DNA of 64,000 nt, taken from the NCBI GenBank assembly GCA_026936335.1, contig JAPMXV010000030.1, positions 428,933 to 492,932 on the forward strand. The letters are read 5' to 3'. Source of the stretch: Mantamonas sphyraenae STR306 (lineage: Eukaryota; Protista; CRuMs). Position 1 is the first letter of the stretch. Each line of letters opens with the position of its first letter. Of this stretch, positions 23,150-23,930 are shown piece after piece. Below the pieces are notes generated by a model. The model saw only the letters and a program-made list of their open reading frames with translations, did no database searches and was not told the DNA's origin. The position numbers and the translations under genes were made by a program.

Positions 23150-23930
23150 ACGCAACGGGCTGAGTGCACGTGTGTGGGACATGGGCGGCAGCGCAGGTGA
23201 TTGCCTGCGCGCCGCTGGTCTTTTGCAGGCGTGGACGTGATCAGCCGAGTTTCCACCTGCGGCCTGTGGGCTGGAGCGGGCTCCTGCTGTTTAACCCTAA
23301 GTGTGTGTGCATATGATGTCGCATTGCCAATCATGTGAGGCTGCTCTTTTTTCGCTGGACACCTTCTGGGCCTCCAAAATCAACAACGAAGCAAGGTGTC
23401 GGCCCAGCCCGACGGTGCGCTCCGTTCCTCCGTCCCCGTATGGCTGTTCCTCGTTGTCTGTGCATGGGTCGGATCGGGCAGGAGACACACAACGTGTCTG
23501 CATGCAGTGTGGACGTGGGTGCACACCGACTACGTGCGTCTCTCGCACGGCAGGAGGCTTGCACGACTGCCTGATCACGACTCGGCACATCTCCACATTG
23601 TGTGTTTTTTCCCTCTTTTGCGATGTCCCCGTTCCCGTGGCGTCCACAGCCCGCTGCACTGCGCCGTGTGTCTCCACGTGTTTGTGTATCCCACACGAGA
23701 GCAGGTGGAGGCATGCGTCGCGCCGCGGCCGCCTGGAGATTCGGTCTCTCGACAATGGGAAGGTGTGTCGGTGTGTGTCGACACGCGTGTCCACGTCGGT
23801 GTGCCACGGCGATTACGGCGACGCACGTCTGCATGTGTGCATGCATATCTGTGGGTGCGGGGAGCGCGTGTGTGTGTGTGTGTGTGTGCGTGTGTGTGCG
23901 ACAAACCGCACGTCTGCACACACACACACT
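23150..23930 (+). ncRNA. TR: Putative telomerase RNA (ends approximate)
   Basis: Template TAACCCTAA 23292-23300; boundary hairpin 23275-23288; pseudoknot 23337-23403; P1 23268-74/23404-10; CR4/5-like junction with P6.1 GAGA-TTCGG-TCTC 23736-23748; nested long-range helices. No credible ORF. Confidence 0.8.

What the first reader, a model, noticed from the sequence alone, without database searches (positions are those of the whole stretch)
23150..23930. Hidden telomerase RNA gene with template, pseudoknot and CR4/5 in the main ORF-free gap of the housekeeping block
Seen on the + strand, in order. (1) P1 5' strand GGGCTGG (23268-74) pairs with CCAGCCC (23404-10) and encloses the core. (2) Hairpin AGCGG-GCTC-CTGCT (23275-88) sits 3 nt before the template, as a template-boundary element would. 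(3) TAACCCTAA (23292-300) is 1.5 repeats complementary to this chromosome's own TTAGGG telomere. (4) Hairpin ATATGAT/ATCATGT (23311-36). (5) H-type pseudoknot: GAGGCT (23337-42)/GGCCTC (23369-74) crossed with GACACCTT (23358-65)/AAGGTGTC (23393-400), with a U6 loop (23347-52) and an A-rich loop (23375-92). (6) A three-way junction of TTCCCGT (23632-38)/ATGGGAA (23755-61), a long hairpin (23665-77/23705-17) and GAGA-TTCGG-TCTC (23736-48). Known: this order is the conserved TR architecture, and vertebrate/fungal P6.1 is a 4-bp stem with a 5-nt loop carrying U at position 2 and G at position 4, as here. Inference: this is the organism's ~0.7-0.8 kb TR. TRs diverge too fast for homology search and are unknown for many protist lineages.
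Basis: partly seen in the sequence, partly recalled or inferred. Interest (0 to 1): 0.97.

Follow-up and report, generated by a model that had tools for sequence, protein, structure and literature searches.

The report
Likely telomerase RNA gene of Mantamonas
This is very probably the gene for the RNA that templates chromosome-end DNA in Mantamonas, a deep-branching protist group where no such RNA was found in the literature searched, and it is built like the animal and fungal versions, which would date that design to before animals, fungi and amoebae split.

Summary
The window is the telomeric end of a Mantamonas sphyraenae (CRuMs) chromosome (25.06 Mb, 78 contigs). The genome has an intact TERT and TTAGGG telomeres. 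My census found four interior TAACCCTAA copies; only this one is followed by a U-loop/A-loop pseudoknot. That pseudoknot was the sole strict hit in 281 kb and appeared in 0 of 8,000 shuffles. P1, a P1.1-type boundary hairpin and a P6/P6.1 junction (4-bp stem, NUNGN loop) follow in animal/fungal order. Rfam's vertebrate TR model aligns weakly to this core (7.7 bits, far below cut-off) and not to the three rival loci. Verdict: telomerase RNA, about 0.88. Not shown: expression (no RNA run was listed), covariation (no homologous locus found), TERT binding, and the ends. The P5 closure is unstable in whole-RNA folds, and the gap is not strictly ORF-free. It lacks the U1/U4/U6 promoter element and has internal T6 runs, so Pol II is inferred; no canonical H/ACA, C/D or Sm signal was found. 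The scan noted another 'possible TR' elsewhere in this genome, which I could not test. New member of a known kind.

The parts
23256..23844 (+). Minimal predicted telomerase RNA; the 5' and 3' ends are unknown and the 3' end may extend to about 23945
   Evidence: Constrained and free folds; single copy in the genome apart from the GT repeat
23264..23274 (+). P1 5' strand (core-enclosing helix), pairs with 23404-23415
   Evidence: 7 Watson-Crick pairs plus a 4-bp extension; pair probability 0.8-1.0 in folds ending at or before 23850, 0.03-0.23 in folds to 23940
23275..23288 (+). P1.1-type template-boundary hairpin, 3 nt before the template
   Evidence: forms once P1 and P3 are fixed, low probability in unconstrained folds
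23292..23300 (+). Template UAACCCUAA: 3-nt alignment region plus 6-nt copied region, product GGGTTA
   Evidence: Only interior copy flanked by non-C on both sides in 25 Mb; same 9-mer as the Ustilago template (PMC9564094)
23310..23337 (+). Hairpin between template and pseudoknot, abutting P2 (possibly the counterpart of basal-metazoan P2.1)
   Evidence: probability 0.7-0.85 in folds ending at or before 23850
23337..23403 (+). H-type pseudoknot: P2 23337-42/23369-74; U-rich loop 23343-53; P3 23354-65/23393-403; A-rich loop 23375-92; two U-A pairs at the junction
23404..23415 (+). P1 3' strand, contiguous with the P3 3' strand
23500..23530 (+). 5' strand of the long scaffold arm (P4-like), pairs with 23795-23844
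   Evidence: 28 bp in three helices in the free fold of 23256-23850; alternative folds exist
23632..23761 (+). CR4/5-like domain: P5, long P6 (23639-23733), P6.1
   Evidence: (z -2.1)
23736..23748 (+). P6.1: 4-bp stem and 5-nt loop with U at position 2 (23741) and G at position 4 (23743)
   Evidence: Meets the NUNGN definition in PMC3592445; probability 0.57-0.92 in most folds
23795..23844 (+). 3' strand of the scaffold arm
23851..23945 (+). GT/AC-repeat hairpin; may be a 3' domain or only intergenic microsatellite
   Evidence: the GT tract matches many places in the genome
22544..23107 (-). Divergent neighbour FAM210; shares the 150-nt upstream gap
   Evidence: PF06916, E 6.7e-18; best relative is Mantamonas plastica FAM210
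24000..25578 (-). Convergent coiled-coil gene; its true stop is probably near 24000 after an intron or frame change
63821..64000 (+). TTAGGG telomere, the predicted product

Best explanation
This is the single telomerase RNA gene of Mantamonas sphyraenae, transcribed on the + strand divergently from FAM210, probably by RNA polymerase II. The RNA binds the 959-aa TERT on contig C3 through two domains. In the core, P1 closes a ring holding the template and a pseudoknot whose U-rich loop forms base triples with P3. The telomere end (...TTA-3') pairs with the 3' UAA of the template, TERT copies CCCAAU to add GGGTTA, the P1.1 hairpin stops read-through, and the primer realigns for the next repeat. 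The distal P6/P6.1 pair, on the tip of a long arm, clamps the TERT RNA-binding domain and activates it. Shown: the sequence elements, their order and rarity, TERT and the telomere repeat. Inferred from animal and fungal telomerases: transcription, triples, TERT binding and activity. Unknown: the ends and the 3' processing.
For: Organism and need for a TR: identity; intact TERT, E 1e-58 to human TERT. Template census: searches give four interior TAACCCTAA. One rival lies in a 466+-codon open frame and two look like intron branch-point regions; none has a U-run over 3 downstream. Pseudoknot unique and rare. P6/P6.1 junction rare. Rough joint chance for about 900 any-register templates: 0.002 with the middle descriptor, 0.012 with the loosest, 1e-5 with the strictest (my product of rates, assuming independence). 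RF00024 places its P1 and template on this core but does not hit the three rivals cut the same way. Definitions met: PMC3592445 and PMC8480181. Region 23260-23940 folds at z -4.5, partly owing to the GT/AC hairpin.
Against: No expression data: no RNA run was listed. No homologous locus, so no covariation. The RF00024 score is 7.7 bits against a cut-off of 70, E 3.9, on a fragment I chose; the genome-wide RF00024 search did not return this locus. Descriptors were written after seeing the candidate. Nested folding prefers another core structure (-51.5 versus -44.4 kcal/mol before adding P2, itself about -8.7). P5 is lost in whole-RNA folds. Only two U-A pairs lie at the P3 junction, and three nucleotides separate P3 from P2. 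No known 3' processing signal. Another candidate noted by the scan (s1-596593) was not tested. The census omits interior copies preceded by CC, and other template registers were only sampled.
Confidence: 0.88

Rival explanations
1. A chance assembly of helices in GC-rich intergenic DNA around a telo-box-like motif in the FAM210 promoter; the real TR lies elsewhere.
For: The motif is 185 nt upstream of the FAM210 start. A telomere-like motif sits upstream of an apparent gene start in an unrelated contig. At 60% GC helices are easy to find, and 300-nt windows over the core are not unusually stable (z 0.7 and 0.1). No expression or conservation data.
Against: Interior TAACCCTAA is very rare here (four copies found), so there is no genome-wide telo-box system. 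A promoter motif does not predict a U/A-loop pseudoknot (0 of 8,000 shuffles), P1 and P6.1 in the right order.
Confidence: 0.07
2. The true TR is a different RNA, for example the ~310-nt structured RNA with a Pol III-like terminator noted elsewhere in this genome (s1-596593), using another template register. This locus would be another ncRNA or a TR relic.
For: Ciliate and plant TRs are short Pol III transcripts with an snRNA-type promoter (PMC12133305), and this genome has such an element at U1, U4 and U6. About 700-900 any-register template matches were not examined.
Against: The census leaves no other UAACCCUAA locus with a pseudoknot. A relic would be expected to have broken helices, and no second copy exists.
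Confidence: 0.04
3. The stretch encodes a protein (ATG 23313 opens 365 codons on +), with the structure accidental or with the TR cut from an mRNA as in Ustilago.
For: Open frames cross the region. Ustilago maydis TR is processed from an mRNA (PMC9564094).
Against: No Pfam match; all six frames score non-coding (a weak test); the product is Cys-rich, low-complexity and antisense to the neighbour; most frames are open here because stops are scarce.
Confidence: 0.01

Closest known systems
Basal metazoan telomerase RNAs (sponge, placozoan, cnidarian; PMC8480181)
   Same: P1-enclosed core, P1.1 boundary hairpin, an extra stem in the core, U-rich pseudoknot loop, canonical CR4/5 with P6.1, CR4/5 on a long arm.
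   Different: No canonical H box or ACA box found. Longer (about 590-690 nt, against about 370-450 nt for the deuterostome TRs listed). Whether the extra stem occupies the P2.1 position could not be checked because figures are not held.
Filamentous-fungus and Ustilago telomerase RNAs (PMC3592445, PMC9564094)
   Same: 9-nt 1.5-repeat template (UAACCCUAA in Ustilago), boundary element, core-enclosing helix, P5/P6/P6.1 with a 4-bp stem and NUNGN loop.
   Different: Much shorter than 1.3-2 kb; no PK2.1 helix; three unpaired nucleotides at the pseudoknot junction (described for budding yeasts); no classic Sm site or evident splice-type 3' signal.
Vertebrate telomerase RNA (Rfam RF00024)
   Same: The model aligns P1 and the template to 23260-23425; similar A-rich strand before P3.
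   Different: 7.7 bits against a cut-off of 70; P1.1 present; 9-nt rather than 11-nt template; no H/ACA domain.
Plant and ciliate Pol III telomerase RNAs (PMC12133305)
   Same: Template plus pseudoknot plus distal stem-loop logic.
   Different: No snRNA upstream element here; internal T6 runs would end Pol III transcription; plants lack P6.1 (PMC8480181).

Membership tests
Telomerase RNA | Single-stranded template of about 1.5 repeats complementary to the organism's telomere | tested here: met
Telomerase RNA | Template-boundary element 5' of the template | tested here: met
   5-bp hairpin 3 nt upstream; predicted only, low probability without the pseudoknot fixed
Telomerase RNA | Pseudoknot 3' of the template with a 4-5 U loop able to form triples | tested here: met
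   U6 loop, P2 6 bp, P3 8-11 bp, rare against controls; the triples themselves are inferred
Telomerase RNA | Core-enclosing helix | tested here: met
   P1 7+4 bp
Telomerase RNA | Cognate TERT in the genome | tested here: met
Telomerase RNA | Expressed as a discrete RNA | tested here: inconclusive
   No RNA run was listed; the published libraries are poly(A)-selected
Telomerase RNA | Helices supported by covariation in relatives | tested here: inconclusive
   No homologous locus recovered
Telomerase RNA | Binds TERT and templates synthesis | not testable with these tools
   Needs immunoprecipitation and reconstitution
Animal/fungal-type TR with canonical CR4/5 | P6.1: 4-bp stem and 5-nt NUNGN loop linked to P6 | tested here: met
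   23736-48, 2 nt from the P6 base
Animal/fungal-type TR with canonical CR4/5 | P5-closed three-way junction | tested here: inconclusive
   1.9 kcal/mol above the local minimum, absent in whole-RNA folds; P5 is dispensable for activity (PMC3592445)
Vertebrate TR, Rfam RF00024 | Score at or above 70 bits | tested here: not met
   7.7 bits; not filed under this family
Metazoan H/ACA-type TR | Hairpin, ANANNA, hairpin, ACA 3 nt from the end | tested here: not met
   After the long arm the sequence is AUAUCU, and no ACA follows the last hairpin
Fungal Sm-type TR | Sm site near the 3' end | tested here: inconclusive
   No AU(3-6)G. This organism's Sm sites are degenerate (AUUUC core in U1 and U2); a tandem AUUUC at 23944-53 could be one, or could be the neighbour's 3' signal
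Pol III (type-3 promoter) TR of plants and ciliates | snRNA upstream element and no internal T-run terminator | tested here: not met

The most novel reading that the evidence does not exclude
This is the first telomerase RNA from CRuMs, and the first with a canonical P6/P6.1 domain outside opisthokonts. The animal/fungal two-domain design would then be inherited from the common ancestor of CRuMs and Amorphea, and this RNA would be matured by a route using neither H/ACA, C/D nor a classic Sm site.
Probability: 0.4. Interest if true: 0.82.

Novelty: new member of a known kind. Interest (0 to 1): 0.68.

Why it matters
Telomerase RNAs diverge too fast for ordinary searches and are known from only a few eukaryotic groups. 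My literature searches found none for CRuMs, Amoebozoa, apusomonads or unicellular holozoans; the library lacks most subscription papers. PMC8480181 traces canonical CR4/5 to before the animal-fungal split and notes its absence in plants. A P6.1-bearing TR in the sister group of Amorphea would move that origin deeper and help decide whether the Pol II, CR4/5-type RNA or the short Pol III type is older. It supplies a seed for covariance searches in the missing lineages, and a compact RNA with a one-ORF TERT that can be reconstituted in vitro.

Tried and rejected
Rfam over 22000-25500: only microsatellite-driven miRNA matches. Genome-wide RF00024: one unrelated 17-bit hit. RF02462 (ascomycete TR) search: tool errors twice, not pursued. 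Metagenome pattern scan: two chance hits, a phage-like contig and an alphaproteobacterial-type contig, without P3 pairing. Viral scan: two chance hits. FAM210 synteny: the only close relative is a transcriptome protein of M. plastica with no contig. snRNA promoter element: absent near the locus. My first three-way-junction descriptor, based on the minimum-energy fold, missed the candidate itself; I replaced it with ensemble sampling, which is a post hoc relaxation. A P6.1-like hairpin 550 nt after another template-like site (L016) lies in what reads as leucine-rich-repeat coding sequence and has no pseudoknot. Telomere variant repeats gave no sign of template read-through.

Full report
Organism. 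The window is the last 64 kb of contig C30 in an assembly of 25,061,354 bases and 78 contigs whose ends carry TTAGGG arrays. Size, contig number and GC match the Mantamonas sphyraenae assembly (25.06 Mb, 78 contigs, 59.19% GC; PMC10492846). The best relative of the neighbouring FAM210 protein is from Mantamonas plastica. Mantamonas belongs to CRuMs, which branches at the base of Amorphea. The genome has one TERT, an uninterrupted 959-codon frame on C3 with the RNA-binding domain (E 3.9e-25), the T motif and the reverse-transcriptase motifs, matching human TERT at E 1e-58. A telomerase RNA gene must therefore exist somewhere in this genome.

Observation. P1 extends by 4 bp and P3 by 3 bp past a bulge, so that P1.1, P1 and P3 meet without linkers; the hairpin at 23310-37 abuts P2. 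P6 has a basal helix that leaves 2 nt before P6.1. In the free fold of 23256-23850 a long arm (23500-30 with 23795-844) carries the CR4/5-like domain at its tip. Two statements need qualifying. The gap is crossed by long open frames; these score as non-coding, but the codon model also scored FAM210 negative. The CR4/5 region prefers a four-way junction locally, the compact three-way form being 1.9 kcal/mol higher, and P5 disappears in whole-RNA folds while P6 and P6.1 mostly persist.

Template census. TAACCCTAA flanked by non-C on both sides occurs three times in the genome; two are degenerate telomere repeats and the third is this locus. Followed by C it has three interior copies (C23, C61, C76). 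Copies preceded by CC were not enumerated. I fetched these rivals and 17 interior AACCCTAA sites from the first 100 listed. None has a U-run longer than 3 in the 10-90 nt after the template; this locus has U6. A template match alone is weak evidence, since any-register 8-9-mers number roughly 700-900 genome-wide.

Chance. A descriptor for a telomerase-type pseudoknot (U-run in loop 1, UU/AA at the P3 junction, A-rich loop 3) hit only 23337 in 281 kb of strand-bases, including all rival loci; a middle version added one weak hit and the loosest gave eight rows, none of the others near a template. In dinucleotide shuffles the strict form occurred in 0 of 5,000 (core) and 0 of 3,000 (whole gap), the middle form in 6 and 8, the loose form in 55 and 51. 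NUNGN hairpins occur 85 times in 324 kb, and only 3 others reach 5% three-way-junction occupancy. A 7-bp enclosure like P1 arises in 4.3% of random pairs. Multiplying these rates over about 900 templates gives 0.002 (middle), 0.012 (loose) or 1e-5 (strict) expected loci. This assumes independence and uses descriptors written after seeing the candidate, though their features come from published TRs (PMC3592445). As a separate check, Rfam's vertebrate model was one of three families reported on the 171-nt core and put its P1 and template on the predicted ones (7.7 bits, E 3.9). It was not reported for the three rival 9-mer loci cut the same way. The score is far below the cut-off, and the genome-wide search missed the locus.

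Mechanism. By analogy with Neurospora, whose 9-nt, 1.5-repeat template is copied processively (PMC3592445), and Ustilago, which has the same UAACCCUAA (PMC9564094), the 3' UAA aligns the telomere end and six bases are copied to give GGGTTA. The hairpin 3 nt upstream corresponds to P1.1, the ancestral boundary element of animals, fungi, plants and ciliates (PMC8480181). The U6 loop would form triples with P3; only two U-A pairs lie at the junction, so further triples would have to use G-C pairs (inference). P6 and P6.1 would bind the TERT RNA-binding domain; P5 is not needed for activity in fungi or vertebrates, which softens its instability here. From my own knowledge, the U-G pair that folding programs place across the P6.1 loop is also seen in human P6.1.

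Biogenesis. U1, U4 and U6 share an upstream element about 70 nt before the start; U2 lacks it. It is absent near this locus. T6 runs at 23347 and 23605 would stop Pol III, so Pol II from a promoter shared with FAM210 is the simplest reading. No classic Sm site, C box or canonical H/ACA pair was found. The arm-hinge-hairpin layout at 23844-23945 resembles an H/ACA domain but lacks both boxes, and the tandem AUUUC after it could be a degenerate Sm site or the neighbour's 3' signal. The 3' end is open.

What could not be shown. No RNA run was listed, which does not mean none exists; the published libraries are poly(A)-selected. No homologous locus was recovered from metagenomes, viral contigs or FAM210 synteny, so there is no covariation. 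The scan's notes include another 'possible telomerase RNA' in this genome (s1-596593), which I could not locate.

Comparison and novelty. It works like an animal/fungal telomerase RNA and meets every sequence-level defining feature I could test. It is not a member of RF00024, of the H/ACA class or of the Pol III class. Three papers mention both Mantamonas and telomerase; the one I read names it only in a tree legend, and the other two are general evolution papers with one mention of each word. Other searches found no TR for CRuMs, Amoebozoa or unicellular holozoans. Canonical CR4/5 was so far dated to before the animal-fungal split.

Verdict.

Noticed in passing
L008 and L009 (G000:C69, - strand): Both U6 snRNA genes appear split by a ~115-nt GT...AG intron with a CTGAAC branch-like motif, inserted right after GAUUAG; one copy reads ACGAGA instead of ACAGAGA. 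From memory, U6 introns are known in fungi. The scan had also noted this.
   Followed up: partly
L057, L058, L059, L008, L009: Shared snRNA upstream element GGTCGCRAGTYGTCRA about 70 nt before U1, U4 and U6; U2 lacks it. U1, U2 and U4 are all followed by T-rich runs.
   Followed up: partly
L057, L006, L058: Sm sites are degenerate (AUUUC core in U1 and U2, AUCUUUGG in U4).
   Followed up: no
L004:1296-5001 (G000:C3): TERT is a single open frame within 10 kb of the contig start, directly after a DNA polymerase epsilon subunit 2-like frame on the same strand (the name is my reading, and the scan noted the same).
   Followed up: no
G000:C43 and G000:C34: U2 and U4 each occur as two copies in inverted orientation 7-8 kb apart.
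   Followed up: no
window 24000-24500: The convergent coiled-coil gene changes frame between about 24290 and 24400; an intron or assembly frameshift joins a conserved-looking C-terminal piece ending at 24000.
   Followed up: partly
L030 (G000:C25:309227): A short inverted telomere-like motif sits just inside the telomere array.
   Followed up: no
whole genome: Interior TAACCCTAA is depleted: 3 hits for the non-C-flanked form against 19 for the reversed control.
   Followed up: partly
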